Positions 4,146 to 18,562 of a stretch of 64,000 bases of DNA are shown one piece after another. Within the stretch, counting starts at the first letter, position 1. The number at the start of each line of letters is the position of its first letter. The notes beneath the pieces are model-generated. The model was not told where the DNA came from, made no database searches, and saw only the letters and a program-made list of their open reading frames with translations. The stretch lies in the IMG/VR virus record IMGVR_UViG_3300019776_000324, positions 1 to 64,000 of that record, one strand, 5' to 3'. Both the position numbers and the translations under genes were made by a program.

Positions 4146-5231
4146 ATGTCAGATACAAGAACAGTCAATTCAGTTCAAGCTCGTAAAAGTTTACTGAAAG
4201 CATTCAAAAAACAACGCCCATTATTTTTATGGGGTCCTCCTGGTATTGGTAAGTCAGAGTTGGTTGCTGACTTGACTGAAGAACTAGGTGGTGCTATGAT
4301 CGACCTTCGGTTGGGTCAGATGGAGCCGACAGATATTCGCGGTATTCCTTTTTATAACAAAGATTTGGGCAAGATGGATTGGGCTGAGCCTATCGATTTG
4401 CCAGATGCAGAATTTGCTGGACAGTATCCGATTGTAGTCTTGTTCTTGGACGAGATGAATTCAGCGGCACCATCAGTTCAAGCGGCTGCTTATCAGTTGA
4501 TTTTGAATCGTCGTATTGGCAAGTATAAAATGCCAGACAATGTAGTTATTGTGGCCGCAGGTAATCGCGAGTCAGACAAAGGTGTTACATATCGTATGCC
4601 TACTCCGCTTGCAAATCGTTTCATTCACCAAGAGATGAAGGTAGACTTTGCGGCTTGGCAAGATTGGGCTGTTAACCACGGCATCCATAAAGATGTGGTT
4701 GGTTACTTGACCTACGCTAAACAGGACTTGAATGAGTTCGATGCTAAATCAGCTAGTCGTGCATTCGCTACTCCACGCTCATGGACATTCGTATCACAGT
4801 TGTTAGAAGACGAAGATGGTGATGATGACACTATCATGAACTTGGTTGCAGGCACTGTAGGTGAAGGACTTGCTGTTAAGTTTATGGCACACCGCAAGAT
4901 TGCTGGTAAAATGCCTAAGCCAGAAGATATCTTGGCTGGTAAGGAAAAAGAGCTGAATGTCAAAGAAGTATCGGCTATGTACAGCTTGGTAATCTCCATG
5001 TGCTACGAGCTTAAAGCGGCTGTAGAAGCCAAGGTAGAGGACAAGAAGTTCCATGAAATGGCAGATAACTTCTTTGCCTACATGATGAAGAACTTTGAAA
5101 CTGAACTTGTGGTAATGGGAGCCCGCATAGCACTTACGACCTATAATTTGCCATTCCAACCAACTAAGTTGAAAAACTTTGATGAGTTCCATAAAAGATA
5201 CGGCAAGTATATTTTACAAGCCAGTGCATAG
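4146..5231 (+). CDS. MoxR-like/dynein-related AAA+ ATPase
   Basis: Walker A GPPGIGKS, Walker B LFLDEMN, sensor AAGN, Arg finger 'PLANRF' and 'TPRSW'. Confidence 0.9.
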   Translation: MSDTRTVNSVQARKSLLKAFKKQRPLFLWGPPGIGKSELVADLTEELGGAMIDLRLGQMEPTDIRGIPFYNKDLGKMDWAEPIDLPDAEFAGQYPIVVLFLDEMNSAAPSVQAAAYQLILNRRIGKYKMPDNVVIVAAGNRESDKGVTYRMPTPLANRFIHQEMKVDFAAWQDWAVNHGIHKDVVGYLTYAKQDLNEFDAKSASRAFATPRSWTFVSQLLEDEDGDDDTIMNLVAGTVGEGLAVKFMAHRKIAGKMPKPEDILAGKEKELNVKEVSAMYSLVISMCYELKAAVEAKVEDKKFHEMADNFFAYMMKNFETELVVMGARIALTTYNLPFQPTKLKNFDEFHKRYGKYILQASA

Positions 5232-5282: not shown

Positions 5283-5310
5283 CAAAAGGAGCTTAGGCTC
5301 CTTTTGTTTT
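5283..5310. terminator. Bidirectional rho-independent terminator
   Basis: CAAAAGGAGC-ttag-GCTCCTTTTG followed by TTTT; the loop holds the stop of the minus-strand NUMOD3 ORF. Confidence 0.7.
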
Positions 5311-5465
5311 GCCCTTTAATGCTTCACTAATCTTACGCTTGGTCTCTTCACTCATTGTATAGGTCCGACCTTTCATTGGCGATACACGACCTTTTAATTT
5401 AGCTGATCTTTTAGCATTCGCTTCTTCGGTTTGCGGTTTACCAGGCAACCCATTTTTAGCCCAGG
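5293..5465 (-). pseudogene. Homing-endonuclease remnant (NUMOD3 DNA-binding repeats only)
   Basis: 'QTEEANAKRSAKLKG' and 'MSEETKRKISEALKGK' are NUMOD3-type motifs. No nuclease domain; the upstream part is the antisense of a promoter. Confidence 0.6.
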
Positions 5466-5494
5466 TTGACCTGAAATTAGCTCTATAGTATAAT
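5466..5494 (+). promoter_or_regulatory. Sigma70-type promoter driving the small-ORF array
   Basis: TTGACC-17bp-TATAAT. Confidence 0.8.
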
Positions 5495-5525
5495 AGTGTT
5501 ATCATGTTAAAAACAGGGGCAAATA

Positions 5526-5753
5526 ATGACTAAACTATTAATAGATCGCCTAGATAGATTAACTCTCCTGGTATCTGAATACTATTTTCCTCAATGGATC
5601 GAACAAGGGTATGGAGCACCAAAAGAAAGCTCCTGGCGTCAAATATTTGAATGGTGTTTAGACTGTGGCATTGAGTGTAATAGAGGTCGTGGCACTACCT
5701 TAAGATTTCATAAAGAAACAGATGTTACAGCATTTATGTTAAAGTGGAGTTGA
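5526..5753 (+). CDS. Small FxL[RK]W-family protein
   Basis: Ends DVTAFMLKWS; internal WC motif. Confidence 0.75.
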   Translation: MTKLLIDRLDRLTLLVSEYYFPQWIEQGYGAPKESSWRQIFEWCLDCGIECNRGRGTTLRFHKETDVTAFMLKWS

Positions 5754-5755
5754 AA

Positions 5756-5956
5756 ATGAACTATTTAAGTATAGCACAGATTGATGAAGTAAAGATGGAA
5801 ATGGATGACCTGCTGATACCTATCGCAAAGATTAGTTTAAGTATTCGTCCTGAAGATATACAAAATATGATAATGATGCACGGCCCAGACTTTATGCCAG
5901 AACTACAGCGTATGATTGGCGAAATTGTATTGGATTCTTATAAGACTCAGGATTAA
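5756..5956 (+). CDS. Hypothetical protein
   Basis: ATG 5756 follows a GGAG SD formed by the upstream W-S codons. Confidence 0.65.
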   Translation: MNYLSIAQIDEVKMEMDDLLIPIAKISLSIRPEDIQNMIMMHGPDFMPELQRMIGEIVLDSYKTQD

Positions 5957-6002
5957 ACAGGCTGTGTCGCTACAGCCTTCCACCTTTACTATTATGTTCA
6001 CT

Positions 6003-6332
6003 ATGAAATTTAAAATCGTCAAAACTGATCGTAGGCATACTGCCAATCAAGTATTCCGGTACTATGTTGAGCCTGCATACGAATTAGGTGTTGGCCGTGA
6101 CGAGCGTATTGAAATGTTTAAAGAGTTGCGAGCTTGGTGTTGGGAACAGTTTGGGCCTGGTTGCGAGCGTGATTATGTTGTGCTACACCCGGTTCCTGCG
6201 GGCATAGATGGTCAGTGTCGAATGGCAACTCAAGAGCGTTGGGCTTGGCTTACTACAACTGACACTAATTCGGTGTTGAGAATCTATTTTAACGATGATG
6301 AACTAGCGTGGTTTAAACTCAAGTGGGCATGA
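6003..6332 (+). CDS. Small FxL[RK]W-family protein
   Basis: 'WCWEQFGPG...DDELAWFKLKWA'; start uncertain (5994 or 6003). Confidence 0.75.
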   Translation: MKFKIVKTDRRHTANQVFRYYVEPAYELGVGRDERIEMFKELRAWCWEQFGPGCERDYVVLHPVPAGIDGQCRMATQERWAWLTTTDTNSVLRIYFNDDELAWFKLKWA

Positions 6333-6538
6333 TGATTCGAATTGCCAATTTACAACAGCGTGATGGAATCCATCACTGGCTCAAAGATCGTGGAATCTAT
6401 CGTGATCTTTATGAGTTGGGTTATGACTTTGGTGATTCATCTGACGAGGGCATAGAACTCTGGCCCGTGCTTAGAATCAACGACGGTGTGTTATCAGCAA
6501 CTGATGTAACTGAATTTATATTAAGGTTTGGTGTATGA
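6329..6538 (+). CDS. Small FxL[RK]W-family protein
   Basis: Ends TEFILRFGV; ATGA overlap. Confidence 0.7.
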   Translation: MMIRIANLQQRDGIHHWLKDRGIYRDLYELGYDFGDSSDEGIELWPVLRINDGVLSATDVTEFILRFGV

Positions 6539-6735
6539 CCCAGGTTGAATGTCACATACCTATGAGCCGTATGGAGGAGATTACAGAATGGTTGCACAAC
6601 AACATCGGCCCAGGTTGGATACACCCCGACACACATGTTTGGAGTTATGGTGAGCTGTATGAATCAGTTCATTTTAGCCGTGAACAGGATGCCGTTATGT
6701 TTAAACTAAAATGGGCTGGAAATGAAAACATATAA
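6535..6735 (+). CDS. Small FxL[RK]W-family protein
   Basis: 'WLHNNIGPGW...EQDAVMFKLKWAG'. Confidence 0.75.
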   Translation: MTQVECHIPMSRMEEITEWLHNNIGPGWIHPDTHVWSYGELYESVHFSREQDAVMFKLKWAGNENI

Positions 6736-7075
6736 GCGTACAATTATTATCCGTGAAAGAGATCTTTGTAGTCTAATGTACAAGACTATTAAAAAAGGCC
6801 TGTTTGACCGCATTGATGTAGAACCGTTAACCTATCAAGAAATACAAAACGAAATATTAATAGATACATTAAAGGGCACACCAACTCGTAAGTGGAGTGT
6901 ATTGCCTGATGTGTATGAAACACTAATGTACAAGGAAGGTAACTTGTACAACAAGCAGTATTTGTCCTGGTTGTTGACCATGGATTATCCTAACGGACAG
7001 ATCTATGTGCAGAGCCGTTCAGGCGAACCCACTGATCCTTTACACCGTGTGACTTTTGAGAAAGACTATGCGTAA
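6722..7075 (+). CDS. Hypothetical protein
   Basis: Coupled ORF in array; no motif. Confidence 0.7.
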   Translation: MKTYKRTIIIRERDLCSLMYKTIKKGLFDRIDVEPLTYQEIQNEILIDTLKGTPTRKWSVLPDVYETLMYKEGNLYNKQYLSWLLTMDYPNGQIYVQSRSGEPTDPLHRVTFEKDYA

Positions 7076-7313
7076 ACGCCTACACGAATCTCGTTACTTT
7101 AGACTGCAACAAGAGCACACAGCCAAAGGTCGCAAGTTCTATAGAATTGTATTCTGGAAACTGTGGCCACTGAGCGTAGACGACGAAGAACGAATTAGAG
7201 ATGTAATAGATCCACAGCGTAGCCGAAGTGGTCGAAATGGAACCAATTGGAAATATACTAATCGCAAGGAAGCAGAACAAATGTATAGTATGTTGTTGTT
7301 AAGGTGGAGTTAA
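7068..7313 (+). CDS. Small FxL[RK]W-family protein
   Basis: Ends EAEQMYSMLLLRWS. Confidence 0.7.
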   Translation: MRKRLHESRYFRLQQEHTAKGRKFYRIVFWKLWPLSVDDEERIRDVIDPQRSRSGRNGTNWKYTNRKEAEQMYSMLLLRWS

Positions 7314-7315
7314 AG

Positions 7316-7675
7316 ATGAAACATTATTTGTCATTTATTCAGTGGTTAATTCAGCGTATGTTTCGGACTGTTATATCAGGACCAGTTAGACTTTTTAAAT
7401 GGTATAAAGGTCGACTATATTACGAAACATTTTTAACCATACTGGCATCCATTGTTGGTTGGGCCATGCTGTTATTTGCAGGTGCTGTCGCATCAACTAC
7501 TAATGTTAATGGTAAGTTGGTAGTTGAGACTGATGATGTTTGGCCATTTATAATAGCTTTGTTTGCGCCGCCTGTGGTGTTTATTGTGGCTTGCGTTTCT
7601 ATTCAATATGATCATTACTGTTCAGAGCTAGAGCGCACTATGAAAACTCTTAAAGGCAAGCATGACAGTATATAA
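7316..7675 (+). CDS. Hypothetical membrane protein (2 TM)
   Basis: Two hydrophobic segments; SD comes from upstream AAGGTGGAG. Confidence 0.7.
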   Translation: MKHYLSFIQWLIQRMFRTVISGPVRLFKWYKGRLYYETFLTILASIVGWAMLLFAGAVASTTNVNGKLVVETDDVWPFIIALFAPPVVFIVACVSIQYDHYCSELERTMKTLKGKHDSI

Positions 7676-7865
7676 AGCAAAGATGCCAGAAGCATGGGCT
7701 CGTATGGAATGGTGTCGAGCTCAGTTCGGTGGCGAAGGTGAACCAAATTGGGAAAAGTATGGCGGAGTTGATATTGCCCATGGACTACGCTGGTGGCGTA
7801 GACAAGGCTACTTGTTCTTTCGCAATGAACGAGATTTTGTCCTATACTGTTTGAGGTGGGCATGA
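7662..7865 (+). CDS. Small FxL[RK]W-family protein
   Basis: 'WCRAQFG...ERDFVLYCLRWA'. Confidence 0.75.
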   Translation: MTVYKAKMPEAWARMEWCRAQFGGEGEPNWEKYGGVDIAHGLRWWRRQGYLFFRNERDFVLYCLRWA

Positions 7866-8227
7866 AGATTAAAGAATTTTACCATGAGTTTGAAATGCTA
7901 GTGCGACCAAGTTCACGCAGGTTGCGTCGTATGAAAAATCCTGGATACAGATCCGATGTATGGAATGCCTATATCGATGATTCTATGATATATGACATCA
8001 GTAATGTTGCTGAAGAAGTTGAGTGTGTGGAGGTGCTCATGCCTGCGGACCGTCTTGAAGAGTTGGAACAACTATTAAAACATTATGAAAAAATGGAAGA
8101 ATCGCATCAGCACAGGCATGTTGTTATTAGTAAGCTGAGAGAGGACGAGCGAGTGCGTATTAAAAATCCTGCTGTTCGTCAAGCATGGGAACACTACTTA
8201 ACATTATTAAACTTGTGCAGAGATTAA
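7862..8227 (+). CDS. Hypothetical protein
   Basis: ATGA-coupled; helical C-terminus 'NPAVRQAWEHYLTLLNL'. Confidence 0.7.
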   Translation: MKIKEFYHEFEMLVRPSSRRLRRMKNPGYRSDVWNAYIDDSMIYDISNVAEEVECVEVLMPADRLEELEQLLKHYEKMEESHQHRHVVISKLREDERVRIKNPAVRQAWEHYLTLLNLCRD

Positions 8228-8228
8228 G

Positions 8229-8471
8229 ATGAATAGCAAAGATAGACGCAAAGATCGTAGAGCATGGAAGTATTCTGTAGCTACTCCTCATGTAATGATG
8301 ACTGGAGTTGCGGGCATGCAAGACGAGTATGATGCAATGTGGAACTGGTGCAAGGAAAACTTTGGTAGCGATGCTCGTTACTGTGGATGGCGTGATCGTG
8401 AGTGGGGTGAGCGTTGGGAGTTTAACGACAGTAAGAAAGCTGCACTATTTTCTCTAAGGTGGAGTAGATGA
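8229..8471 (+). CDS. Small FxL[RK]W-family protein
   Basis: 'WCKENFG...KKAALFSLRWSR'; N-terminus is paralogous to 12569. Confidence 0.75.
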   Translation: MNSKDRRKDRRAWKYSVATPHVMMTGVAGMQDEYDAMWNWCKENFGSDARYCGWRDREWGERWEFNDSKKAALFSLRWSR

Positions 8472-8803
8472 AACTAGAACCTTGGCAGGCAGAAGTATTT
8501 GTTAAGTATTGCGAGAATGATATCAAAATGACCATGAATATAGGCCGTCAGACGGGCAAATCAACATGGGTAAGTATGTTAAGGAACTTTATGGAACGAC
8601 CAGAAAAACGATTTCAATTAGTATCGGGAATCTATAACTACTCACTAATGATCGAAGACTACATGTGGTGGGCTGACAATGAGCGTGAAATACTTAACTG
8701 GATGGCGGAGAACTTACCGCGCGGCATTGAACATCAACAGGGCATGATTCTTACATTTGATACAGACAAACAGCGTATGATGTTCTTGTTGAGGTGGGCA
8801 TGA
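8468..8803 (+). CDS. FxL[RK]W-family protein with N-terminal P-loop-like fragment
   Basis: 'LEPWQ...GRQTGKST' then ...QRMMFLLRWA. Confidence 0.7.
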   Translation: MKLEPWQAEVFVKYCENDIKMTMNIGRQTGKSTWVSMLRNFMERPEKRFQLVSGIYNYSLMIEDYMWWADNEREILNWMAENLPRGIEHQQGMILTFDTDKQRMMFLLRWA

Positions 8804-9075
8804 CAGTAAAGTATGTTGACGGTTGGTACGAAATAGAGCATCTCCCGCCTAAAGAGATCTGGGCAGTTCATAGCAAAGAATGGGCATGGAAACCTAGACG
8901 AAATTGGTGTAGGAAAACATTTGCTCCGGGTGAATGGGAAATGCGCGATCCTATATATCATTACAGTATAGGTCCTAGCGGACCCGGTAAACGAATACTA
9001 TCAACTACACCATTAACCTGGCGATTCAAGCGTGAAGCTGATGCCTTGTTGTTTACCTTAAGGTGGGCCAAATGA
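8800..9075 (+). CDS. Small FxL[RK]W-family protein
   Basis: 'WCRKTF...EADALLFTLRWAK'. Confidence 0.75.
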   Translation: MTVKYVDGWYEIEHLPPKEIWAVHSKEWAWKPRRNWCRKTFAPGEWEMRDPIYHYSIGPSGPGKRILSTTPLTWRFKREADALLFTLRWAK

Positions 9076-9353
9076 ATGTTGCTATCCAGCGTGTAACCGA
9101 TATACTTGAAAATTTAATAGCCGAAGAGGCCGCAAAAGAAATGCAAGCAAGTATGGACTATGATGTGCTATGTGAAGTAATGATACCATTTGGTTATACT
9201 GCTGTCCAAATTGAGTACGGCAACAACAAGCGGTGGATTGATGTCATGGCATGGGTGGACAGCAACCGTGTTGGTGATTATCAAGAGCACAAAGGTAAAT
9301 GGTTGTTTAAAAATGAACAAGATGCTATAATGTTTAAGTTGAGGTGGGCCTGA
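9072..9353 (+). CDS. Small FxL[RK]W-family protein
   Basis: Ends EQDAIMFKLRWA. Confidence 0.75.
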   Translation: MNVAIQRVTDILENLIAEEAAKEMQASMDYDVLCEVMIPFGYTAVQIEYGNNKRWIDVMAWVDSNRVGDYQEHKGKWLFKNEQDAIMFKLRWA

Positions 9354-9544
9354 TGTTTGATGAAAAGAATCGTGTTATAGTATTATCCGCTGGCAGTACA
9401 CAACAGGAGAAACTTGATTGGTGTTGTGATCATTTGGCAGGAACGGTTATGTGCCATCCTATCACTTACGGTCTTGATGATGCTGAGATATGGTATTTTG
9501 AAACGGGTGAAGAATCTACTATGTTTGCGTTAAGGTGGGCATGA
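9353..9544 (+). CDS. Small FxL[RK]W-family protein
   Basis: 'WCCDHLAG...EESTMFALRWA'; TGATG overlap. Confidence 0.75.
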   Translation: MFDEKNRVIVLSAGSTQQEKLDWCCDHLAGTVMCHPITYGLDDAEIWYFETGEESTMFALRWA

Positions 9545-9780
9545 AGATAGAAACTACATGGGATAACCTTAATAAGGTCCCTTGGACAGCAATTAACCGA
9601 GCTGGTGACTATTATCATACGCATGTTAGATCTACAAAGGGTGCTTTCATTGATAGATTAAAGGCCGGTGCCGAATATAGCGCCTGGATGCGAAACAATT
9701 GGGGAATACACCACGAGCCTTTGGAATTCAAAATAGTCGATGAGAAAAAATACACCATGTTCTTGTTGAGGTGGGCATGA
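9541..9780 (+). CDS. Small FxL[RK]W-family protein (DEKKY subtype)
   Basis: Ends IVDEKKYTMFLLRWA. Confidence 0.75.
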   Translation: MKIETTWDNLNKVPWTAINRAGDYYHTHVRSTKGAFIDRLKAGAEYSAWMRNNWGIHHEPLEFKIVDEKKYTMFLLRWA

Positions 9781-10007
9781 AAGTAAAGAAAACCGATCCA
9801 ACCTTGTTTGTTGATCCGTATGGAGAAGCCAAACAGAAGTTGTTGAACCGAGGCTATGTTGCTATACCAGTGACTAAGAATCATAACTGGACCGGCATTC
9901 ATGAATGGTGCAAACAATATCTACACTTTGACTACACCTGGTTTGGTTTAGAATTTTGGTTTGCTGACGAACAAGATGCTGTGTTATTTCAGTTGAGGTG
10001 GGCATAA
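9777..10007 (+). CDS. Small FxL[RK]W-family protein
   Basis: 'WCKQY...EQDAVLFQLRWA'. Confidence 0.75.
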   Translation: MKVKKTDPTLFVDPYGEAKQKLLNRGYVAIPVTKNHNWTGIHEWCKQYLHFDYTWFGLEFWFADEQDAVLFQLRWA

Positions 10008-10177
10008 TGTCACTTAATCAAGATTATGCAGTTTCGTGTAAAAACATAACCAACGACCAATGGAACTGGTTGTGCAATACCATAGGAACTCCTACAAAAG
10101 ATTGGCACTATAACTTTGCACATATTTGGTTCTATAAAGAAGAACATAAGACTCTTTGGCTGTTGAGGTGGGCATAA
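10007..10177 (+). CDS. Small FxL[RK]W-family protein (56 aa, missing from ORF track)
   Basis: Translated by hand: MSLNQDYAVSCKNITNDQWNWLCNTIGTPTKDWHYNFAHIWFYKEEHKTLWLLRWA; TAATG overlap. Confidence 0.75.
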   Translation: MSLNQDYAVSCKNITNDQWNWLCNTIGTPTKDWHYNFAHIWFYKEEHKTLWLLRWA

Positions 10178-10178
10178 C

Positions 10179-10427
10179 ATGGCACAATTTTATCAAGGAC
10201 CACACTTTTGGGACAAGAGTACTTACGAAGTTACTGTAAAGACTACTCGGTATCGCGTTCGCCAAGTGTGGATTGATGATATGATCAAGTGGGCTAAAGA
10301 ACGAGAAATAAGCATTCACTGGCAAGGCGAAAGCACTCATGTCCACAACGATGATGAATGGCACGAAGCACACTTCTGCATTTACGACAGCAATGATCGT
10401 ATGTTATTTGCGTTGAGGTGGGCATGA
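10179..10427 (+). CDS. Small FxL[RK]W-family protein
   Basis: Ends NDRMLFALRWA. Confidence 0.75.
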   Translation: MAQFYQGPHFWDKSTYEVTVKTTRYRVRQVWIDDMIKWAKEREISIHWQGESTHVHNDDEWHEAHFCIYDSNDRMLFALRWA

Positions 10428-10723
10428 GTCTATCAAATCAAGCAAAGAATATAAAAGGTCACATGGATCTGTTTCCAGAAAAGTGGAACGATAACCGTGC
10501 CAAACGAGATAGATTTTGGGCGATGTTAAGACGGGTCAAATCAGACTATTTTACCCTAGTCAAAGATTTGGGCAACGATCCCGACGATGGAAGTTTTTAT
10601 ACATACATGCAGGATACCTATGGTATAAAACTAATATTAACAAACCGTGGTGAGATCACAGACATGTTTGAAGTTACAGATGAAAAGAAACAAATGATGT
10701 TTATTTTAAAATACGGATCATGA
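10424..10723 (+). CDS. FxL[RK]W-family protein (DEKK subtype)
   Basis: 'YGIKL...DEKKQMMFILKYGS'. Confidence 0.75.
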   Translation: MSLSNQAKNIKGHMDLFPEKWNDNRAKRDRFWAMLRRVKSDYFTLVKDLGNDPDDGSFYTYMQDTYGIKLILTNRGEITDMFEVTDEKKQMMFILKYGS

Positions 10724-10944
10724 TTAGAGTTAGTACCAAAGACGAAGCGTTTATGCAAGCATATCACAATGCTCGTCGTGCCTTACCGGTTGAAACTCTA
10801 GAAAGCCCCAGGCAGTATGGTGCTCGCTGGCGAGAAACATATTGTTGCAGAGTAGATGCAAACGGAAATAATAAGATAGACGAAACTTATTATGTCTTTG
10901 ACAACGATGAAGATTACACTTGGTTTATGTTACGATGGGGTTAA
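10720..10944 (+). CDS. Small FxL[RK]W-family protein
   Basis: Ends EDYTWFMLRWG. Confidence 0.75.
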   Translation: MIRVSTKDEAFMQAYHNARRALPVETLESPRQYGARWRETYCCRVDANGNNKIDETYYVFDNDEDYTWFMLRWG

Positions 10945-11159
10945 AGATCGCTGTCAAAGATTCAGCCGAAGCATTTGGCCTTAAAATGGAAGTAGACCGT
11001 CATGGCCTGCGTCCTGGTGCAGGATATACTTGGCGTTATACTCCAGCGGTAAGAGATTACTTTGGCCTCATAGCCGAAGAAGAGGATGTGGCTCGAGTAG
11101 AGTTTGAGTTTGACGATCCAAAGTGGGCAACATATTTTCAATTACGGTGGGCACAATGA
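10935..11159 (+). CDS. Small FxL[RK]W-family protein
   Basis: Ends PKWATYFQLRWAQ; start uncertain. Confidence 0.7.
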   Translation: MGLKIAVKDSAEAFGLKMEVDRHGLRPGAGYTWRYTPAVRDYFGLIAEEEDVARVEFEFDDPKWATYFQLRWAQ

Positions 11160-11470
11160 CAACTACAACAGTATATAATCTAGCAGATGGTAGTGTAGTA
11201 GAGCTAAAAACCAATCCAGGTGCAGCACCTATTGTATTCCTTAATGGTGTTATACAACAACCTGGAACTTATTCCTTGTCAGGAACAAATGTCATATTTG
11301 ATACACCGCAAAAAACATGGCAATGGCAACAGCATTATGCTTGGTTACCAAAGCGCATTAATGGTAAGTGGTATTGGTTTACTTATGTTTATCGTTACTG
11401 GTGTCTATCGCCTGGCGGAGGATTTTGGCGATATGGCGACGACTTTGACAAATTAAAGGACACCAAATGA
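11156..11470 (+). CDS. Chimeric hypothetical protein (virion-type beta repeat plus Trp-rich domain)
   Basis: 'VFLNGVIQQPGTYSLSGTNVIF' then 'WQQHYAWLPKRINGKWYW'. Confidence 0.65.
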   Translation: MTTTTVYNLADGSVVELKTNPGAAPIVFLNGVIQQPGTYSLSGTNVIFDTPQKTWQWQQHYAWLPKRINGKWYWFTYVYRYWCLSPGGGFWRYGDDFDKLKDTK

Positions 11471-11724
11471 GTTGGAAACCCATGGTAGACTATGAAGAAT
11501 CGGTTCCTCTAAAGCGTCGAGCAACCAAGAAAAAGGTTTGGGATGAATTGACTCAAACCTGGAAAGATGCTACAATATGGACTGTAATCTATAATCGTGA
11601 GCTAAAGGATTGGTTAGAAGAGACCTATCCTGGCAAGCAAGGGTGGGGCACTGCCTGGAGCGATAGCAAGATTATCATGGAAGAACCAGTTTACTTACAT
11701 TATTGTTTAAAGTTTGGAGCATGA
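11467..11724 (+). CDS. Small FxL[RK]W-family protein
   Basis: Ends VYLHYCLKFGA. Confidence 0.7.
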   Translation: MSWKPMVDYEESVPLKRRATKKKVWDELTQTWKDATIWTVIYNRELKDWLEETYPGKQGWGTAWSDSKIIMEEPVYLHYCLKFGA

Positions 11725-11951
11725 TGTCACCTTGGGAATACTTACGCGAGTGGAATCTAATGGAAAAGCCGGATTCACGCCGAGCCAGTAGAGAGTGGAT
11801 CAATCAAGAAATGCAGAGTCACTGGCCAGGTCCGTATCGTGTGGAACGATGCCAATCACGCTATGCTGGCACAGGTTGGCGTATTGATTACGAGATTAAA
11901 TTTGCGGATCCTCAAGAAGAAACAATGTTTAGATTAAAGTTTGGAGCATAA
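11721..11951 (+). CDS. Small FxL[RK]W-family protein
   Basis: Ends EETMFRLKFGA. Confidence 0.7.
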   Translation: MMSPWEYLREWNLMEKPDSRRASREWINQEMQSHWPGPYRVERCQSRYAGTGWRIDYEIKFADPQEETMFRLKFGA

Positions 11952-12334
11952 TGGATAGAGATTTAGAAGACGATCTTAAGAACGATGCCTTGGTCATGGA
12001 AAAGATCAAGGATCGTCGCTATGCTCAAAATGTCTATGCCGCACTGTGCAACATGCGTTGGCAACCTGAGGAAGTATGGCCTGTGCTCACTGATGAATAC
12101 TGGTCATGTAGTTGGCGCAGTGCTGGTGGGCTTGTAGCTGATCTTAGAGTTGACTTTAATGAAGATTACATGGATTGGTATTGTTCAGGTATTAGTGGAG
12201 GATTTGATTTTGAATCTGATGACGAAGAGCGTAATAAAGGATATGTTGCAGAAGGGGAAGTAACAGATGAAATTCGTGAAGATTTTGCTCGCTTGGGTTG
12301 GCATCCAAGTCCATGGCCTAAAGACGAGGTATAA
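11951..12334 (+). CDS. Hypothetical protein
   Basis: 'YAQNVYAALCN...WSCSWRSAGGLVA...YMDWYCSG'. Confidence 0.75.
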   Translation: MDRDLEDDLKNDALVMEKIKDRRYAQNVYAALCNMRWQPEEVWPVLTDEYWSCSWRSAGGLVADLRVDFNEDYMDWYCSGISGGFDFESDDEERNKGYVAEGEVTDEIREDFARLGWHPSPWPKDEV

Positions 12335-12338
12335 TAAT

Positions 12339-12572
12339 ATGTTTGTTAAAGATGTTGAAAAAATGATTATCGGCAGTTTAAAAGAAGTTATGAAGGATCG
12401 CAATCTTTTTTATAACTCAACTGTGGGGCCGGAGTACTGTCACTTAACCAACGAGGGTGCAAAGGCTATTACTGACATGTGTAATGTCTTACTACCTAGG
12501 TTGCTTAAAGCACAAGAGCTAGAAGATATTGAACGCAGTAAAATGATAGTTATGCAAGAACTTAAAAAATGA
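12339..12572 (+). CDS. Hypothetical protein
   Basis: ATG 12339 follows a GAGGT SD. Confidence 0.7.
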   Translation: MFVKDVEKMIIGSLKEVMKDRNLFYNSTVGPEYCHLTNEGAKAITDMCNVLLPRLLKAQELEDIERSKMIVMQELKK

Positions 12573-12835
12573 ACAGTCACGACCGTAGAGTTGTAGAGCG
12601 AGCATGGCCACACCATGTTTATCTGCACGATGGTGACAGTTTAGTTGAAGATTGTTTTGAATGGTTACACACAAATTTTGGTTCATGCCGTTGGACTGGC
12701 AAGCGCAATCCGCGCTGGTGCTGGCGTCCAGATATGGGTCAAGGCCCTAACTTTGTTATAATGCGACATGGTGTAGAAATATTCTTCCGTAAGAAAGAAG
12801 ATTACGCTTGGTTTATGTTAAAGTGGGATAGATGA
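12569..12835 (+). CDS. Small FxL[RK]W-family protein
   Basis: 'WLHTNFG...EDYAWFMLKWDR'. Confidence 0.75.
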   Translation: MNSHDRRVVERAWPHHVYLHDGDSLVEDCFEWLHTNFGSCRWTGKRNPRWCWRPDMGQGPNFVIMRHGVEIFFRKKEDYAWFMLKWDR

Positions 12836-13116
12836 ATTACTATTACGAAATTAGTGAAAAGTATGATGGCACTGTGTTTGGCGACCGGTGGCGTTACTGG
12901 TGCTTGGCCAACTGTAGCCCAGCTGAAGGTGGCAAAATGTGTTTTAAAACACACGACGAGTTTGTAGCTCGTAGCAGTCGTGTATGGTTAGAAAATGCCA
13001 ATGGTGTTTATCAAATCAAGCCCGACTGGTATGGCATGCGTGGGCAAGTGGATCCACATGAGTTTACTATGATTAAACTAAAATCACGAGTGTATAAATG
13101 GTGGTACGATGAATGA
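12832..13116 (+). CDS. Hypothetical protein (degenerate FxLK motif)
   Basis: 'HEFTMIKLKSR' near the C-terminus. Confidence 0.7.
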   Translation: MNYYYEISEKYDGTVFGDRWRYWCLANCSPAEGGKMCFKTHDEFVARSSRVWLENANGVYQIKPDWYGMRGQVDPHEFTMIKLKSRVYKWWYDE

Positions 13117-13450
13117 TGATGACATAAAAGCCTTGCATAACAAGCTACGAGGTTACAGCAAACAACTACCTGGGCAAGCCGGCGACGAATACTATGAAAG
13201 TCAGGCCGCTAGATTAGATACTATCATAGGTGGCGACACTGGCCACTTCCAACGCTTGCAACGAGTACGCAACGAATGGGACGAGCTAGCTAGAGCTGTG
13301 CCTGTTGGACAAGGTTTCTTAACATTCTACGACTATGTAAAAGAGTACTATGGTATCAAACTAATGTATGACGGCGATGATCTAAAGTTAGAATATAGTA
13401 TTATAGACGAAAAGAAGTACACTGTGTTCTTATTGAAGTTTGATAGATAA
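13109..13450 (+). CDS. FxL[RK]W-family protein (DEKKY subtype)
   Basis: 'YGIKL...IIDEKKYTVFLLKFDR'. Confidence 0.75.
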   Translation: MNDDDIKALHNKLRGYSKQLPGQAGDEYYESQAARLDTIIGGDTGHFQRLQRVRNEWDELARAVPVGQGFLTFYDYVKEYYGIKLMYDGDDLKLEYSIIDEKKYTVFLLKFDR

Positions 13451-13704
13451 TGCATATAAACAATTTTACTTTACCTACTCCGCCGCAGGAATTACTAGAC
13501 AAGTGTATTCAAGTTGCATTTGATGGTGAGGGCCGGTTTATGAGTAAAATGCGCCGCTGGTGTTACGATCATACAGAATCATTTGTATGGGCAGATCGTA
13601 TTGACATGAGCGATAGTAGCTACTGGACCGGCCCGGATGATTATGTAGTGTTTTATTTTTATAAAGAAATTGATGCTACACTATTTAGATTAAAGTGGCT
13701 ATGA
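13450..13704 (+). CDS. Small FxL[RK]W-family protein
   Basis: 'WCYDH...EIDATLFRLKWL'. Confidence 0.75.
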   Translation: MHINNFTLPTPPQELLDKCIQVAFDGEGRFMSKMRRWCYDHTESFVWADRIDMSDSSYWTGPDDYVVFYFYKEIDATLFRLKWL

Positions 13705-13925
13705 TTGATCGTAATCCACTGTTAACCATTCCTGTAAAAACCTACGCTCATTATAGTGAGTGCGAACCTTGGCTGTTGGCCAATGTAGGTGGCTGGAATG
13801 ACTTATGGTGGAGAGATTTTCAAGATGTTGCTATGCATGTGGCCTTAGGCGAAGGAACACAACCAGACTGCTATTGGTTTTGTCGTGAACAAGATGCCTT
13901 GATGTTTAGGTTAAAATTTCAATGA
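13701..13925 (+). CDS. Small FxL[RK]W-family protein
   Basis: 'WLLANVG...EQDALMFRLKFQ'. Confidence 0.75.
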   Translation: MIDRNPLLTIPVKTYAHYSECEPWLLANVGGWNDLWWRDFQDVAMHVALGEGTQPDCYWFCREQDALMFRLKFQ

Positions 13926-14143
13926 TATGGTCCATGATCATTGCCAAGGTCTTGACTACAGTGATGTCGTGGTTAGATGCTGGCAATCTACGCAACAAGG
14001 TTTACAAGCAGGCTGAAGAAGCAGAAATCATGATGACTGCCTTAGAAGATATTGAACGCATGAGCAAGGAAGACCGGATCAAACACTATGCTCGTACAGC
14101 AATTAACACAGTAAAAGGATTGCCCATTGAAGACGACTATTAA
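13922..14143 (+). CDS. Hypothetical protein
   Basis: ATGA-coupled ORF. Confidence 0.7.
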   Translation: MIWSMIIAKVLTTVMSWLDAGNLRNKVYKQAEEAEIMMTALEDIERMSKEDRIKHYARTAINTVKGLPIEDDY

Positions 14144-14468
14144 GCACAACTTGATTATCTTTCATCGTCCTAAAGAGTGGGATGAACTACAACAACGATT
14201 AATAGATGAATATGGTCGTAGTGTTATTCTGGTTCGAGACAAGTGTCGTCGTGAGCTGGGATTTACTCCCCGCCATCACAGGGGTTTAATTCCTTACCTA
14301 GACAAATGGGGACACGGCGTGGTAAGAAACTCTGGTGCTACCAAAGAGCAAGCTGACAAGTTTATTGCAGAAAATAAACACAAAATGGCCTACGACAATC
14401 AGGTACATTTAGACTTCTATAGCGAAGCAGCAATGAGCTGGTTTGTGCTAAAATATCTTAATGACTAG
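14127..14468 (+). CDS. FxL[RK]W-family protein
   Basis: Ends EAAMSWFVLKYLND; TTG start after AAGGA. Confidence 0.7.
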   Translation: MKTTIKHNLIIFHRPKEWDELQQRLIDEYGRSVILVRDKCRRELGFTPRHHRGLIPYLDKWGHGVVRNSGATKEQADKFIAENKHKMAYDNQVHLDFYSEAAMSWFVLKYLND

Positions 14469-14471
14469 CGG

Positions 14472-14500
14472 TTGACCAGAAATTCCATTTCGGTTATAAT
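14472..14500 (+). promoter_or_regulatory. Sigma70-type promoter (probable leaderless mRNA)
   Basis: TTGACC-17bp-TATAAT; ATG is 6 nt downstream and has no SD. Confidence 0.8.
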
Positions 14501-14506
14501 AGTAGT

Positions 14507-14797
14507 ATGAAAGTGATTAAATTAGACCGAAGATACGCCGGCTTTCCTAAGTGGAAGTATGCCTGCCAATTTCCTGTAAGAAATCACAATTATCGAAAAG
14601 AATATTTTAACTACGTTCGGACATTTAAAGAATTGTTTGGTGCAGAATCTCAGTCAAACCCTGACCGTAATACCGGCGATTGGTCTAAGCCTTTTTGGAT
14701 TTATAACGAGCACTGGTGCACTGACTTTCCTAAACAGCGAATTCTTGTTAAAGATCAAGCGGTTATAAGCATGATCATGCTGAAAATGCCCGGTTGA
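14507..14797 (+). CDS. Hypothetical protein (degenerate family member)
   Basis: Starts 'MKVIKLDRR' like 6003 ('MKFKIVKTDRR'); ends SMIMLKMPG. Confidence 0.7.
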   Translation: MKVIKLDRRYAGFPKWKYACQFPVRNHNYRKEYFNYVRTFKELFGAESQSNPDRNTGDWSKPFWIYNEHWCTDFPKQRILVKDQAVISMIMLKMPG

Positions 14798-14822
14798 CTC
14801 GAAATGCCCAAAATGCTATAAT
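14794..14822 (+). promoter_or_regulatory. Sigma70-type promoter
   Basis: TTGACT-17bp-TATAAT; the spacer (gaaatgcccaaaatgc) nearly matches the 3664 promoter. Confidence 0.85.
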
Positions 14823-14852
14823 ATTACATATAGTTAGAAATTAGGAGCAGAA

Positions 14853-15143
14853 ATGGACAAGATTTACTTCGTACTTGGGTTTACTTTGTTTTGGACTGTG
14901 GCTATTGTTCTGGCAGGTATTGTTCTTATGTATGTTTACCATGCTGTTAAAACCGTTCCAATGGCAATAGATTTTTTTCGCTGGTACCGATTTTATGCTA
15001 TTCGACATAATCCTGAATGGGAATCTCGAGTAGGTATTGTTCACAATTATATTGCGGCATTTATTAGTGTTTGGGATTACAACGAAAATACCCGTATCAC
15101 TCACCATGCTGGTGTAGTTTACAAACCCTACGCATGGAAGTGA
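14853..15143 (+). CDS. Hypothetical membrane protein
   Basis: N-terminal TM; AGGAG SD. Confidence 0.7.
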   Translation: MDKIYFVLGFTLFWTVAIVLAGIVLMYVYHAVKTVPMAIDFFRWYRFYAIRHNPEWESRVGIVHNYIAAFISVWDYNENTRITHHAGVVYKPYAWK

Positions 15144-15172
15144 TTGACCAAATAATCCATTTATAGTATAAT
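15144..15172 (+). promoter_or_regulatory. Sigma70-type promoter
   Basis: TTGACC-17bp-TATAAT-AGTTGTATAGT. Confidence 0.85.
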
Positions 15173-15200
15173 AGTTGTATAGTTAATAAAAGGAGCCCAT

Positions 15201-15530
15201 ATGTTAGAACGCAATTTAGATACTAGAGAAGCACCTACAAAATGGTGGGCGGCGCAAGATGCTCGCATGCGTAACTTGGCAAATAAAAGTCACTACGATG
15301 AGCAAACTCAAATTCGCGTTGAACGCATGATCATGGCCCTGGGTCTTTGCTACAATGCAAAAGGTATTCACGAAGCGTTTGGCAAGCGGGGTGTGAGTAT
15401 CAAAGTAGACCGTCCTACTTCAATCAAAGATCGCGTGAATCTCAAATTGCTAGAACAAGATTGGGAAGAGGCGGGTGTAACTAAAAAGGTAAGCCCACAG
15501 GGCGTTATCTATAGATTCTCTGCAGATTGA
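15201..15530 (+). CDS. Hypothetical protein
   Basis: AAGGAG SD and its own promoter. Confidence 0.75.
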   Translation: MLERNLDTREAPTKWWAAQDARMRNLANKSHYDEQTQIRVERMIMALGLCYNAKGIHEAFGKRGVSIKVDRPTSIKDRVNLKLLEQDWEEAGVTKKVSPQGVIYRFSAD

Positions 15531-15555
15531 CCTATAATTCCATTAATAGTATAAT
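15527..15555 (+). promoter_or_regulatory. Sigma70-type promoter
   Basis: TTGACC-17bp-TATAAT overlapping the upstream TGA. Confidence 0.85.
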
Positions 15556-15583
15556 AGTAGTATAGTTAATAACAAAGGCAGAT

Positions 15584-16867
15584 ATGACCACTAGCACACA
15601 AAACAAAAAAGAATCAGACAAGTTTAAAAACTTATTGGGTCCGACTAACCCTAAAGTTGATGCAGATGTTCGTGAGAAGTTGATTACTGCTCGTGTGGGC
15701 TTGTTACTTCGTGCAAGTTTCTTTGGTAACTTGGCTACTCGCTTAAAGTTAGTCAATGCTGATGAATGGTGTCCAACAGCCGCAACTGATGGTCGTCACT
15801 TTTACTACAATACCCGTTTCGTAAACATGCTCAAGCCAAAAGAGATTGAGTTCTTGTTTGGTCATGAGGTCTTGCACTGTGTTTACGATCACTTTGGCCG
15901 TCGTGGCGATCGTGACCATCAACTGTTTAACATTGCCAATGACTATTGCGTAAACGCAGACTTGAAGAAACATCGTGTGGGCGAGTTTATTACATCAGTA
16001 CCTTGCTTGTACGATGCCAAGTACGAAGGTATGAGTTCAGAAGAGATTTATGATCTCTTGTATGAAAATGCTGAAAAGATCAATATCAGTGATTTGATTG
16101 ACAAATTGCTCGATGATCACTTGGATGGTAATGGTGACGGGGAAGGTGAAGATGGCGATGAGAAAGATGGCAAAGGCAAGGGTCGCCCTAAACTAAGCGC
16201 AGAAGAGCGTCAACAGATCAAAGATGAGATCAAAGAAGCTGTATTGGCTGCGGCTGCCGCTAGCGACGGTGCAGGTAACTTGCCAGCAGGTGTCAAGCGT
16301 ATCATTGAAGATATGACTGCACCTAAAATGAACTGGCGCGAGTTGTTGCGTATGCAATTAGAGTCAACTATCAAGACTGACTACACTTGGATGCGCTCTA
16401 GCCGTAAAGGCTGGCACATGGATGCTATTATGCCTGGACAGAAGTTTGATGAGCTTATTGATATTGCTGTTAGTATTGACGCTTCAGGCAGTATGGGCGA
16501 AGCTATGCTCAAAGATATCTTGTCAGAAGTGCAAGGTATTGTAGACAGTTTCCCAGCTTACAAACTGCACATTGTATCGTTTGATACTCAGATTTACAAT
16601 CCACAGACTTACGACAGTGAGAACTTGGACAATCTAGTAGACTACGAAATCCACGGTGGTGGCGGTACAGACTTTGATTGTGTGTTTGAATACTTCAAAG
16701 AAAATGACATCCAACCCAAGCGTCATATCATGTTTACTGACGGTTACCCATGTGGTAGTTGGGGTGATGAGAACTACTGTGATACTGTGTTTATCATGCA
16801 CGGTACTACTAGCATTGTTCCACCGTTTGGTCAGTACGCTTACTATGAGGAAGAAAAGAGTCACTAA
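15584..16867 (+). CDS. DUF2201-type metallopeptidase plus vWA-domain protein (MoxR partner)
   Basis: 'TAATDG', HEXXH 'HEVLH', acidic/Gly linker, MIDAS 'DASGSM', 'GGGGTDF' and 'FTDG'. Confidence 0.85.
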   Translation: MTTSTQNKKESDKFKNLLGPTNPKVDADVREKLITARVGLLLRASFFGNLATRLKLVNADEWCPTAATDGRHFYYNTRFVNMLKPKEIEFLFGHEVLHCVYDHFGRRGDRDHQLFNIANDYCVNADLKKHRVGEFITSVPCLYDAKYEGMSSEEIYDLLYENAEKINISDLIDKLLDDHLDGNGDGEGEDGDEKDGKGKGRPKLSAEERQQIKDEIKEAVLAAAAASDGAGNLPAGVKRIIEDMTAPKMNWRELLRMQLESTIKTDYTWMRSSRKGWHMDAIMPGQKFDELIDIAVSIDASGSMGEAMLKDILSEVQGIVDSFPAYKLHIVSFDTQIYNPQTYDSENLDNLVDYEIHGGGGTDFDCVFEYFKENDIQPKRHIMFTDGYPCGSWGDENYCDTVFIMHGTTSIVPPFGQYAYYEEEKSH

Positions 16868-17426: not shown

Positions 17427-17617
17427 TCTCTGGATGGATCCTAGTAGTACTGCAATCAACTGCACCATATGTGTATGGTTGGCAACCCATTGGTGAGTTT
17501 GCTTACGAGCAAGAGTGTAAGCAGGCTATCGTGCAATTGCAAACCCGTGCTAAAGAATACAGTACGGTTACTGTGCGTGACTATATTTGTATTCCAAGAT
17601 CAAGGAGTTCCACATGA
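17423..17617 (+). CDS. Hypothetical small protein with two Cys
   Basis: GTGA overlap; 'F..EQECKQA...YICIPR'. Confidence 0.6.
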   Translation: MISGWILVVLQSTAPYVYGWQPIGEFAYEQECKQAIVQLQTRAKEYSTVTVRDYICIPRSRSST

Positions 17618-18551: not shown

Positions 18552-18562
18552 AGGGAATTAAA

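What the first reader, a model, noticed from the sequence alone, without database searches (positions are those of the whole stretch)
7299..11951. Dual-coded junction: the L-R-W-A-stop codons are also the next gene's Shine-Dalgarno and start, forming a plug-in cassette linker
Seen: the motif is encoded TTG/TTA-AGG-TGG-GCA-TGA. This places GAGGTG/AAGGTG (complementary to the 16S anti-SD) about 5 nt before an ATG overlapping the stop (ATGA, TGATG, TAATG). 11 of 13 L-R-W copies use the AGG Arg codon, whereas the neighbouring AAA+ gene mostly uses CGT/CGC/AGA. W-S variants give TGGAGT and F-G-A variants give TTTGGAGCA, again creating a GGAG SD. An exact 24-bp repeat ATGTTCTTGTTGAGGTGGGCATGA lies at 8780 and 9757. 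Inference: each cassette ends in a standard linker that guarantees translation of whatever follows. The linker also offers microhomology for recombination, so units could be added, deleted or shuffled without breaking expression. This would be an integrase-free gene-cassette accordion.
Basis: partly seen in the sequence, partly recalled or inferred. Interest (0 to 1): 0.85.

Follow-up and report, generated by a model that had tools for sequence, protein, structure and literature searches.

The report
Protein tail doubling as ribosome site
In a 344-kb uncultured phage, about 28 small related genes sit head to tail, and the last codons of each (Leu-Arg-Trp-Ala-stop) also spell the ribosome-binding site and start codon of the next gene; this is a very clear case of ordinary translational coupling, and I found no evidence that the shared junction is a special recombination site.

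Summary
TTR-AGG-TGG occurs 10 times in the window (0.73 expected), always on the + strand and always at a gene end between 7299 and 10421. Arg at the motif is AGG in 11 of 13 copies in the stated range (12 of 14 overall). AGG makes up 1.5% of Arg codons elsewhere (p about 1e-20). The 24-bp repeat is exact.

The motif is not a free-standing linker. It is the end of the C-terminal helix of a roughly 55-residue alpha/beta domain. At least 715 clusters of small uncharacterised proteins, many on phage contigs, carry this domain, and Pfam, PHROGs and NCBIfam have no model for it.

Codon choice shows true dual coding. AGG (and AAG for Lys) is used when the next start lies within 14 nt, and CGN or AAA when it does not. 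A second, unrelated family in the same phages uses GGA in the same way.

The array (5526-14468, about 35 ORFs) lies behind one consensus promoter, between a MoxR-type ATPase gene and its DUF2201 partner. In 67 related genomes this interval holds 0 to 37 ORFs.

The recombination idea is not supported. Breakpoints cluster at stop/start junctions, but equally at family and non-family junctions (p = 0.86). Recent duplicates are almost absent, and inserted genes often lack the linker.

The parts
4146..5231 (+). MoxR-type AAA+ ATPase gene, the conserved left flank of the variable interval
   Evidence: 82-94% aa identity in 79 IMG/VR relatives; 51% to the PA5oct ATPase; AAA_5/AAA_3 Pfam hits (weak) on the same gene in ENA
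5464..5525 (+). Promoter repeat (TTGACC-17 nt-TATAAT at 5466-5494) ahead of the array. It is the only 11-of-12 sigma-70 consensus match before 14472.
   Evidence: (families D4, D5)
5526..14468 (+). Head-to-tail array of about 35 small ORFs, 25 of them members of the L-[RK]-[WFY] family, with almost no intergenic DNA. Inferred to be one early polycistronic unit.
   Evidence: gene calls in the ENA record agree; no 11-of-12 promoter match inside (one 10-of-12 match at 11548)
7299..7318 (+). Junction L-R-W-S-stop: TTA AGG TGG AGT TAA, 2 nt, then ATG 7316 (GGTGGAG as SD)
7851..7865 (+). Junction TTG AGG TGG GCA TGA; next start ATG 7862 (ATGA overlap)
8454..8471 (+). Junction CTA AGG TGG AGT AGA TGA; next start ATG 8468
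8780..8803 (+). 24-bp exact repeat, copy 1 (M-F-L-L-R-W-A-stop); next start ATG 8800
9058..9075 (+). Junction TTA AGG TGG GCC AAA TGA; next start ATG 9072
9339..9355 (+). Junction TTG AGG TGG GCC TGA TG; next start ATG 9353 (1-nt overlap)
9530..9544 (+). Junction TTA AGG TGG GCA TGA; next start ATG 9541
9757..9780 (+). 24-bp exact repeat, copy 2; next start ATG 9777
9993..10009 (+). Junction TTG AGG TGG GCA TAA TG; next start ATG 10007
10163..10181 (+). Junction TTG AGG TGG GCA TAA C ATG; next start 10179
10413..10427 (+). Junction TTG AGG TGG GCA TGA; next start ATG 10424
10930..10944 (+). Exception: TTA CGA TGG GGT TAA. Arg is CGA here, and the likely next start is the ATG formed across CGA-TGG at 10935. 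Orthologues keep NNA-TGG (CGA or CAA) or AAG-TGG.
11142..11159 (+). Exception: TTA CGG TGG GCA CAA TGA; next start ATG 11156 (a non-family gene)
11707..11724 (+). Variant tail L-K-F-G-A: TTA AAG TTT GGA GCA TGA (GGAG); next start ATG 11721
11934..11953 (+). Variant tail L-K-F-G-A: TTA AAG TTT GGA GCA TAA TG; next start ATG 11951
14472..15586 (+). Four further promoter repeats (first hexamers at 14472, 14794, 15144, 15527), each ahead of a single gene. These are promoter-bounded single-gene units at the right end of the interval.
15584..16867 (+). DUF2201 (VWA-like partner of MoxR ATPases) gene, the conserved right flank
   Evidence: Pfam DUF2201_N/DUF2201 on the same gene; covered by blastn matches from 57-64 of the 79 relatives

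Best explanation
The L-R-W-A tail is the end of the C-terminal helix of a small, widespread and so far unannotated protein domain, found mostly on phage-like contigs. Its signature is W-C-x-x-x-F-G ... F-x-F-x-x-E-x-D-A-x-x-F-x-L-[RK]-W-x-COOH.

This 344-kb phage carries about 28 deeply diverged copies. Most are packed without spacers into one long early operon, in a variable region between a MoxR ATPase gene and its DUF2201 partner. Because there is no intergenic DNA, the ribosome-binding site and start codon of each gene must lie inside the end of the gene before it.

Selection has therefore fixed the synonymous and near-synonymous choices that make the tail read as an SD plus a start. Arg is AGG, which is otherwise almost unused. 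Leu is TTG or TTA. The last codon ends in A, and the stop is TGA, which together give ATGA. The result is GAGGTG or AAGGTG about 5 nt before an overlapping ATG.

Shown here: the codon bias, the geometry and the domain. Inferred: that the junction works by ordinary translational coupling, that is, termination followed by re-initiation or SD-assisted initiation at -4/-1 spacing.

Genes enter and leave the array as whole units with breakpoints at stop/start junctions, but this happens at any junction, not specifically at this linker.
For: Codon bias in the window: AGG in 12 of 14 motif Arg codons against 11 of 713 elsewhere. Of the 30 AGG codons in + strand genes, 17 lie 8-14 nt before the next start. 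None of the 7 AGG codons in the large - strand genes lies near a start.

Codon bias in other genomes: AGG in 37 of 78 motif Arg codons against 6.8% background. AGG is used in 44 of 69 tails when the next start is within 14 nt and in 9 of 33 otherwise (p = 7e-4). AAG against AAA shows the same pattern, 55 of 84 against 11 of 52.

Other codon choices: GCA in 9 of 11 terminal Ala codons against 40% background. TGA stops in 19 of 28 family genes against 12 of 38 others (p = 0.006). Only 8 of 150 family representatives end in a residue that has no NNA codon, against 36.5% expected from composition.

SD strength: predicted SD:anti-SD duplex of -9.3 kcal/mol at AGGTGG junctions, against -4.0 at junctions after non-family genes.

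Protein-level conservation: a family profile finds 715 representative proteins of 55-160 aa. In nearly all of them the match runs to the C-terminus. Among the best 150, 99 carry LRW and 39 carry LKW.

Structure: the AlphaFold2 model (pLDDT 83) has the order helix, strand, helix, strand, strand, helix. The motif sits in the last helix, residues 65-75 of 76.

Generality: an unrelated phage contig (L087) has about 20 members, most ending in TTG AGG TGG TCA TGA. A second family (HFGVEE-stop) uses GGA in 39 of 62 tails against 22% background, giving GGAG plus ATGA.

Operon: consensus promoters are found only at 5466 and from 14472 onward.

Literature: -4 and -1 spacing are the commonest gene spacings in prokaryotes (PMC12548453).
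Against: No expression data exist, and the host and its 16S 3' end are unknown. A canonical anti-SD is assumed. That assumption rests only on AAGGAG-like sites ahead of the promoter-proximal genes.

Members at 12.5-14.5 kb have overlapping starts but weak or no SD (-0.5 to -4.7 kcal/mol), so an SD is not required for every junction.

The single-operon claim rests on a consensus scan only.

The tails are more uniform within a genome than this explanation needs. The window is mostly ...W-A (GCA TGA) and L087 mostly ...W-S (TCA TGA), although the gene bodies find their best matches across genomes.
Confidence: 0.85

Rival explanations
1. One reading: the 15-24 nt linker is a portable recombination site. 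Units are added, deleted or shuffled by crossing-over between linkers, making an integrase-free gene-cassette accordion.
For: - The interval ranges from 0 to 37 ORFs in 67 genomes.
- Apart from the promoter repeats and a few short two-copy matches inside gene bodies, the repeats of 14 nt or more in the array are the tails.
- A conserved two-gene block (window 9754-10175, 82% nt identity to L098) has different neighbours on both sides. Homology starts and stops at the linker, and the last codon plus stop differ along with the downstream gene.
- A 2.1-kb insertion in L037 is flanked by a 35-40 nt direct repeat of the 3' end of a family-like gene.
- Tails are genome-typical while bodies match across genomes.
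- Gene fragments are rare, so the events are precise.
Against: - Breakpoints hit family junctions (23 of 108) and non-family junctions (20 of 103) equally (p = 0.86). AGGTGG junctions are hit 5 times in 17, against 38 in 194 for the rest.
- Inserted or replaced units are often non-family genes without a linker at the 3' end. Examples are the 246-aa ORF in L015, the 262-aa and 290-aa ORFs in L036, the 80-aa ORF in L060, and the gene at 11156-11470 and its relatives.
- Only one within-genome duplicate at 40% identity or more was found in 67 arrays. Gene order is the same in 4400 of 4606 shared pairs.
- Exact identity between linkers is usually only 12-15 nt.
- The one cross-genome exact 24-mer (L087) can be explained by shared amino acids plus the same codon constraints (my estimate).
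Confidence: 0.12
2. Protein-only constraint: the tail is conserved purely for folding, or for binding a common partner through the free C-terminus. On this view the codon identity reflects common descent or gene conversion, not translation.
For: - L, W and a basic residue are conserved in 715 clusters, and the motif lies in the last helix.
- Genome-typical terminal residues (A in the window, S in L087) could reflect co-evolution with a partner.
Against: - Paralogues are only about 20% identical, so synonymous sites are saturated.
- AGG and AAG depend on the distance to the next start.
- AGG is used in the same way outside the family, and GGA in a second family.
- Orthologues differ by single changes that alter the SD, for example AAG in L029 against AGG in the window for the gene at 8468-8803.
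Confidence: 0.03

Closest known systems
Translational coupling at -4/-1 stop/start overlaps, with the SD inside the upstream ORF (review PMC12548453; the effect on synonymous and stop codon use at gene ends is Eyre-Walker 1996, J Mol Evol 42:73, recalled from my own knowledge and seen only as a reference in PMC2716372)
   Same: ATGA, TAATG and TGATG overlaps; an SD 5 nt upstream inside the preceding gene; a codon and stop-codon bias at the 3' end of the upstream gene.
   Different: Here the constraint falls on the conserved C-terminal motif of one protein family, repeated about 25 times in a row, so the same 12-24 nt recur. The bias is extreme: a codon used for 1.5% of Arg rises to 86%.
PeSL (promoter-early stem-loop) cassettes and hyperplastic regions of T4-type phages (Arbiol et al. 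2010, PMC2839356; PMC4122927)
   Same: A variable region full of small non-essential genes between conserved genes. Repeated regulatory sequences sit at gene boundaries and carry expression signals. The window also has true promoter repeats of about 60 nt (5464, 14472, 14794, 15142, 15525), and these are the best conserved non-coding DNA in the relatives.
   Different: PeSLs are intergenic, about 100 bp long, and transcriptional (promoter plus terminator), and recombination between them was shown experimentally. The L-R-W-A junction is coding, 12-24 nt long and translational, and breakpoints are not enriched at it.
Integron gene cassettes
   Same: Promoterless genes lined up behind one promoter, with each unit ending in a recurrent sequence.
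   Different: No integrase gene and no attC-like imperfect inverted repeat were seen. Junction RNA folds are no more stable than shuffled sequence (z from -1.6 to +0.65). The recurrent sequence is part of the protein.
Gene-amplification 'accordions' of poxviruses (K3L; recalled from memory, not checked here)
   Same: The number of genes at one locus varies.
   Different: Those are recent, near-identical tandem copies. Here the copies are about 20% identical, and their best matches are in other genomes.

Membership tests
Translationally coupled gene pairs | Co-directional ORFs with -4, -1 or very short spacing | tested here: met
   15 of 28 family junctions at -4 and 4 at -1
Translationally coupled gene pairs | SD for the downstream gene located in the upstream ORF at working distance | tested here: met
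   GAGGTG or AAGGTG 5 nt before the ATG; predicted duplex -8.2 to -10.5 kcal/mol at the ten T-T-R-AGG-TGG-G-C-x junctions
Translationally coupled gene pairs | Downstream translation depends on upstream translation | not testable with these tools
   Needs reporter or ribosome-profiling data
PeSL-type modular shuffling | Indel and replacement breakpoints preferentially at the repeated element | tested here: not met
   For the L-R-W-A linker: 23 of 108 family junctions hit against 20 of 103 non-family junctions, p = 0.86. Not tested for the promoter repeats.
PeSL-type modular shuffling | Repeated element is a sigma-70-like promoter plus a stem-loop terminator | tested here: not met
   The linker has no promoter and no stable fold. 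Separate promoter repeats exist at the ends of the array. In relatives with a short interval a stem-loop precedes the promoter.
Integron cassette array | Tyrosine-recombinase integrase next to the array, and attC sites with imperfect inverted repeats | tested here: not met
   The flanks are an ATPase gene and a DUF2201 gene. No structure at the junctions. No direct search for an integrase in the whole 344-kb genome was made.
Recent tandem amplification (accordion) | Near-identical adjacent copies whose number varies between close strains | tested here: not met
   Best paralogue hits are 26-41% identical, or cover the tail only. One duplicate at 40% identity or more in 67 arrays.
Known protein families (Pfam, PHROGs, NCBIfam, PDB) | Significant profile or fold match | tested here: not met
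   No match for the domain. BFVD matches are only uncharacterised proteins of uncultured phages and of Atu_ph07.

The most novel reading that the evidence does not exclude
The family's C-terminal helix has been shaped as a built-in, portable translation-initiation module. Any gene placed behind a member is then expressed without signals of its own, which helps explain why this family forms long arrays in several unrelated phages. Within a genome, the linkers are kept uniform (W-A/GCATGA in this phage, W-S/TCATGA in L087) by short-patch recombination between junctions. On this view the linker would be a coding counterpart of the PeSL element.
Probability: 0.12. Interest if true: 0.7.

Novelty: new member of a known kind. 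Interest (0 to 1): 0.38.

Why it matters
It is a very clean natural example of one stretch of DNA serving two purposes: the end of a folded protein and the ribosome-binding site plus start of the next gene. A codon used for 1.5% of arginines rises to 86% at one position.

This is useful for gene callers and for anyone recoding phage genes, because 'silent' changes at gene ends in such arrays are not silent.

It also flags a large family that Pfam, PHROGs and NCBIfam do not cover (at least 715 clusters at 50% identity). Its members fill early, highly variable regions of freshwater-type jumbo phages and may act in host takeover or counter-defence, but that function is untested.

The negative result matters too. 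Gene-sized mosaicism with breakpoints at stop/start overlaps does not by itself show that a shared junction sequence drives recombination.

Tried and rejected
- Nucleotide and protein searches of cultured phages found nothing for the array. This covers megablast and tblastn with a window member and with a typical homologue.
- PA5oct has the ATPase but no family members nearby.
- Pfam, PHROGs, NCBIfam, a PDB sequence search and a PDB fold search gave no match for the domain.
- The family alignment was too diverse for the search for related loci.
- Exact-protein look-ups for strain variants returned only the same genome under another name.
- The metagenome scan with the non-family gene at 7862-8227 gave only 70-72% relatives on short contigs, in varied contexts.
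- I considered whether L098 is simply the window with a deletion between the two 24-mers. I rejected this because its upstream gene is not an orthologue of the gene at 8468-8803 and shares only the tail.
- I tried the mobile non-family gene at 11156-11470 as a breakpoint probe. It is too diverged, with only the C-terminal half alignable.
- I looked for a junction hairpin that might gate the SD and found none.
- I considered programmed frameshifting or read-through at the junction. No slippery heptamer is visible, and fused two-domain homologues (P0004, P0009, P0019, P0097) look like ordinary stop losses.

Full report
**What the window is.** The window is the first 64 kb of IMGVR_UViG_3300019776_000324, a 344-kb contig of an uncultured phage. 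The same genome is held in ENA as ZENG19-1 scaffold_13. GC content is 40.7%. It has no nucleotide match among cultured phages. Its MoxR-type ATPase (4146-5231) is 51% identical to that of Pseudomonas jumbo phage PA5oct. Genes run on the + strand up to about 29.7 kb and on the - strand beyond.

**Checking the observation.**
- The tails read TTG or TTA, then AGG TGG GCA TGA.
- TTRAGGTGG occurs 10 times, against 0.73 expected. All copies are on the + strand at gene ends between 7299 and 10421.
- In the stated range, 11 of 13 L-R-W copies use AGG. The other two use CGA (10933) and CGG (11145).
- Over all 14 family tails with Arg at this position, 12 use AGG. AGG accounts for 11 of 713 Arg codons elsewhere, and 5 of 156 in the bodies of the same genes. 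Binomial p is about 1e-20.
- The ATPase gene has no AGG codon.
- The 24-bp repeat at 8780 and 9757 is exact, and 31 of 32 bases match when it is extended.
- The next gene's ATG overlaps the stop as ATGA in 15 of 28 family junctions and as TAATG or TGATG in 4. An independent gene call uses the same starts.

**What the motif belongs to.** It is not a free linker.
- 28 ORFs (5526-14797, plus 21774-22124) align over a whole domain. A helix carries W-(C/L)-x-x-x-(F)-G. It is followed by strands, and then by F-x-x-E-x-D-A-x-x-F-x-L-[RK]-[WFY]-x at the very end.
- Pairwise identity is about 20%.
- A profile of the family finds 715 representative proteins (50% clusters) among 1.84 billion. Those listed are 55-160 aa, apart from one 505-aa repeat protein. 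In nearly all of them the match runs to the C-terminus. Among the best 150, 99 have LRW and 39 have LKW.
- A few are two-domain fusions whose joint still shows the Met of the second gene.
- AlphaFold2, run on an alignment of 30 members, gives pLDDT 83. The order is helix, strand, helix, strand, strand, helix, and the motif lies in the last helix (residues 65-75 of 76).
- Nothing in the PDB resembles the model. The BFVD matches are uncharacterised proteins of uncultured phages and of Agrobacterium phage Atu_ph07.
- Pfam, PHROGs and NCBIfam have no model for the domain. Names given by the sources are all 'hypothetical protein'.

**Evidence for dual coding.**
- Of the 30 AGG codons in + strand genes, 17 lie 8-14 nt before the next gene's start, including some outside the family. 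None of the 7 AGG codons in the large - strand genes does.
- In 79 related contigs, AGG is used for 37 of 78 motif Arg codons, against 6.8% background.
- Pooling all genomes, AGG is used in 44 of 69 tails when the next start is within 14 nt and in 9 of 33 otherwise (Fisher p = 7e-4).
- Lys codons behave the same way: AAG in 55 of 84 near tails against 11 of 52 far ones.
- In contig L083, the one Arg tail followed by a 35-nt spacer uses CGT, while the tails with overlapping starts use AGG.
- The terminal Ala is GCA in 9 of 11 cases (background 40%). The stop is TGA in 19 of 28 family genes against 12 of 38 others (p = 0.006).
- Only 8 of 150 family representatives end in a residue that has no NNA codon, against 36.5% expected from composition.
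- The predicted pairing with a canonical anti-SD averages -9.3 kcal/mol at AGGTGG junctions and -4.0 at junctions after non-family genes.
- The junctions have no RNA structure beyond chance.
- At 10930-10944 the Arg codon is CGA and the likely start is the ATG spanning CGA-TGG. Orthologues keep CGA, CAA or AAG there. This is a different register of the same principle.
- A second, unrelated family in these phages (N-terminus MNERIQ, C-terminus HFGVEE-stop) encodes its Gly as GGA in 39 of 62 tails against 22% background. This gives GGAG followed by ATGA.

Dual coding is therefore a general property of these spacer-free arrays and not a feature of one special linker. It matches what is known about translational coupling and -4/-1 spacing (PMC12548453).

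**Why the junctions must carry the signals.** Near-perfect sigma-70 promoters (TTGACC, 17 nt, TATAAT) lie at 5466, 14472, 14794, 15144 and 15527. None lies between 5494 and 14472; only one weaker 10-of-12 match occurs there, at 11548. The roughly 35 ORFs from 5526 to 14468 are therefore probably one transcript. This is inferred from consensus matches only.

**The region across relatives.**
- The ATPase and the DUF2201 gene (15584-16867) are conserved flanks. The distance between them ranges from 34 bp to 10,356 bp in 67 genomes, with 0 to 37 ORFs. The window is the largest.
- Clustering 427 ORFs gives 154 groups, of which 113 are singletons.
- Gene order is the same for 4400 of 4606 shared pairs.
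- Only one within-genome duplicate at 40% identity or more exists.
- With tails removed, 21 of 25 window members find their best match in another genome, sometimes a distant one such as L087 or L083.

So this is a hyperplastic region fed from a large pool of old, diverged family members. It is not an accordion of recent duplications.

**Testing the recombination claim.** Among relatives that are at least 84% identical in flanking DNA, I mapped 148 distinct homology breakpoints.
- 28% lie within 5 nt of a stop codon and 45% within 12 nt. Random positions give 5% and 11%.
- Individual events are exact. A 246-aa ORF is inserted in L015 precisely between a stop and a TAATG. In L008 and L036, a family gene and a 290-aa ORF replace each other between one ATGA and the next.
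- However, family-tail junctions are hit no more often than other junctions (23 of 108 against 20 of 103; p = 0.86). AGGTGG junctions are hit 5 times in 17.
- The inserted genes often have no linker at their own 3' end.

The closest relative of the LRWA block is L098, at 82% nucleotide identity over 9754-10175. It keeps the two-gene block 9777-10177, but with different neighbours. Homology starts about 27 nt before the upstream stop and ends right after AGGTGG. This fits crossing-over in the linker. It fits gene-unit selection plus shared coding constraints equally well, and its upstream gene is not the orthologue of either window gene.

The exact 24-mer also occurs once in the unrelated contig L087, between genes with no other nucleotide similarity to the window. 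Given identical amino acids and the same codon constraints, I estimate this as plausible by chance across millions of contigs. No strain-level variants of this phage could be retrieved.

**One observation still open.** Tails are more uniform within a genome than needed. By my count, the window has 10 tails ending W-A and 2 ending W-S. L087 has about 12 W-S and 1 W-A. Yet the gene bodies pair across genomes. Possible causes are short-patch exchange between junctions, co-evolution with a common partner that reads the free C-terminus, or chance in two genomes. I cannot separate these.

**Verdict.** The dual-coding reading is well supported, and mechanistically it is ordinary translational coupling. 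The cassette picture is right as a description of gene flux in a hyperplastic region. The claim that this linker is the recombination device is not supported by the breakpoint test.

What is new is the protein family and the unusually clean codon signal, not a new kind of system.

Noticed in passing
window 5464-5525, 14472-14508, 14794-14822, 15142-15203, 15525-15586: Five copies of a promoter repeat of about 60 nt (TTGACC-17-TATAAT). [quoted passage not shown] The same element is the best conserved non-coding DNA in relatives (85-89%). In relatives with short intervals it follows a terminator-like stem-loop, so it resembles a PeSL.
   Followed up: partly
window 14507 and 21774: The ATG lies 6 nt after the TATAAT box and there is no SD, so these two family-like genes may be translated from leaderless mRNAs.
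   Followed up: no
window 16867-18799; relatives such as L071:3182-3799 and L078:14626-15068: A second family of small paralogues (N-terminus MN-E/D-R/K-I-Q, C-terminus HFGVEE-stop). Its tail TTC GGA GTT GAA GAA TGA also supplies GGAG plus an overlapping ATG. GGA is used in 39 of 62 tails against 22% background.
   Followed up: partly
P0151, P0153, P0163, P0185 (homologues from metagenomes): A sub-family of the L-R-W domain carries an N-terminal segment of about 50 residues. This segment matches positions 3-54 of Pfam Gp23 (T4-type major capsid protein) at E from 2e-8 to 6e-13.
   Followed up: partly
window 5293-5505, - strand: A 70-aa ORF with NUMOD3-like repeats (a homing-endonuclease DNA-binding motif; the Pfam hit is weak). 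It lies between the ATPase gene and the array promoter and is probably a remnant.
   Followed up: no
L037:segment 950-3200 compared with L038 (98% identical flanks): A 2.1-kb insertion of two genes (a PP-loop ATPase-like ORF with the motif SGGxDS, and a TctC-like binding protein). It is flanked by a 35-40 nt direct repeat made of the 3' end of a family-like gene.
   Followed up: partly
L098:604-834: The orthologue of the window gene 9777-10007 (92% aa identity) carries a TAT to TAA nonsense change at codon 15. The gene caller restarts it at an internal Met.
   Followed up: no
window 30265-36936 and 47769-61958, - strand: A carbamoyltransferase gene, two radical-SAM/SPASM genes and a 4730-codon ORF. 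This may be a modification cluster next to a giant structural or injected protein.
   Followed up: no
window 12520-12537 and 14043-14060: An exact 18-nt repeat inside two non-family genes (12339-12572 and 13922-14143), both encoding L-E-D-I-E-R. They may be distant paralogues.
   Followed up: no
window 521-612: ARAGORN reports a tRNA-Pro with anticodon AGG inside a 321-codon ORF. This is probably a false positive.
   Followed up: no
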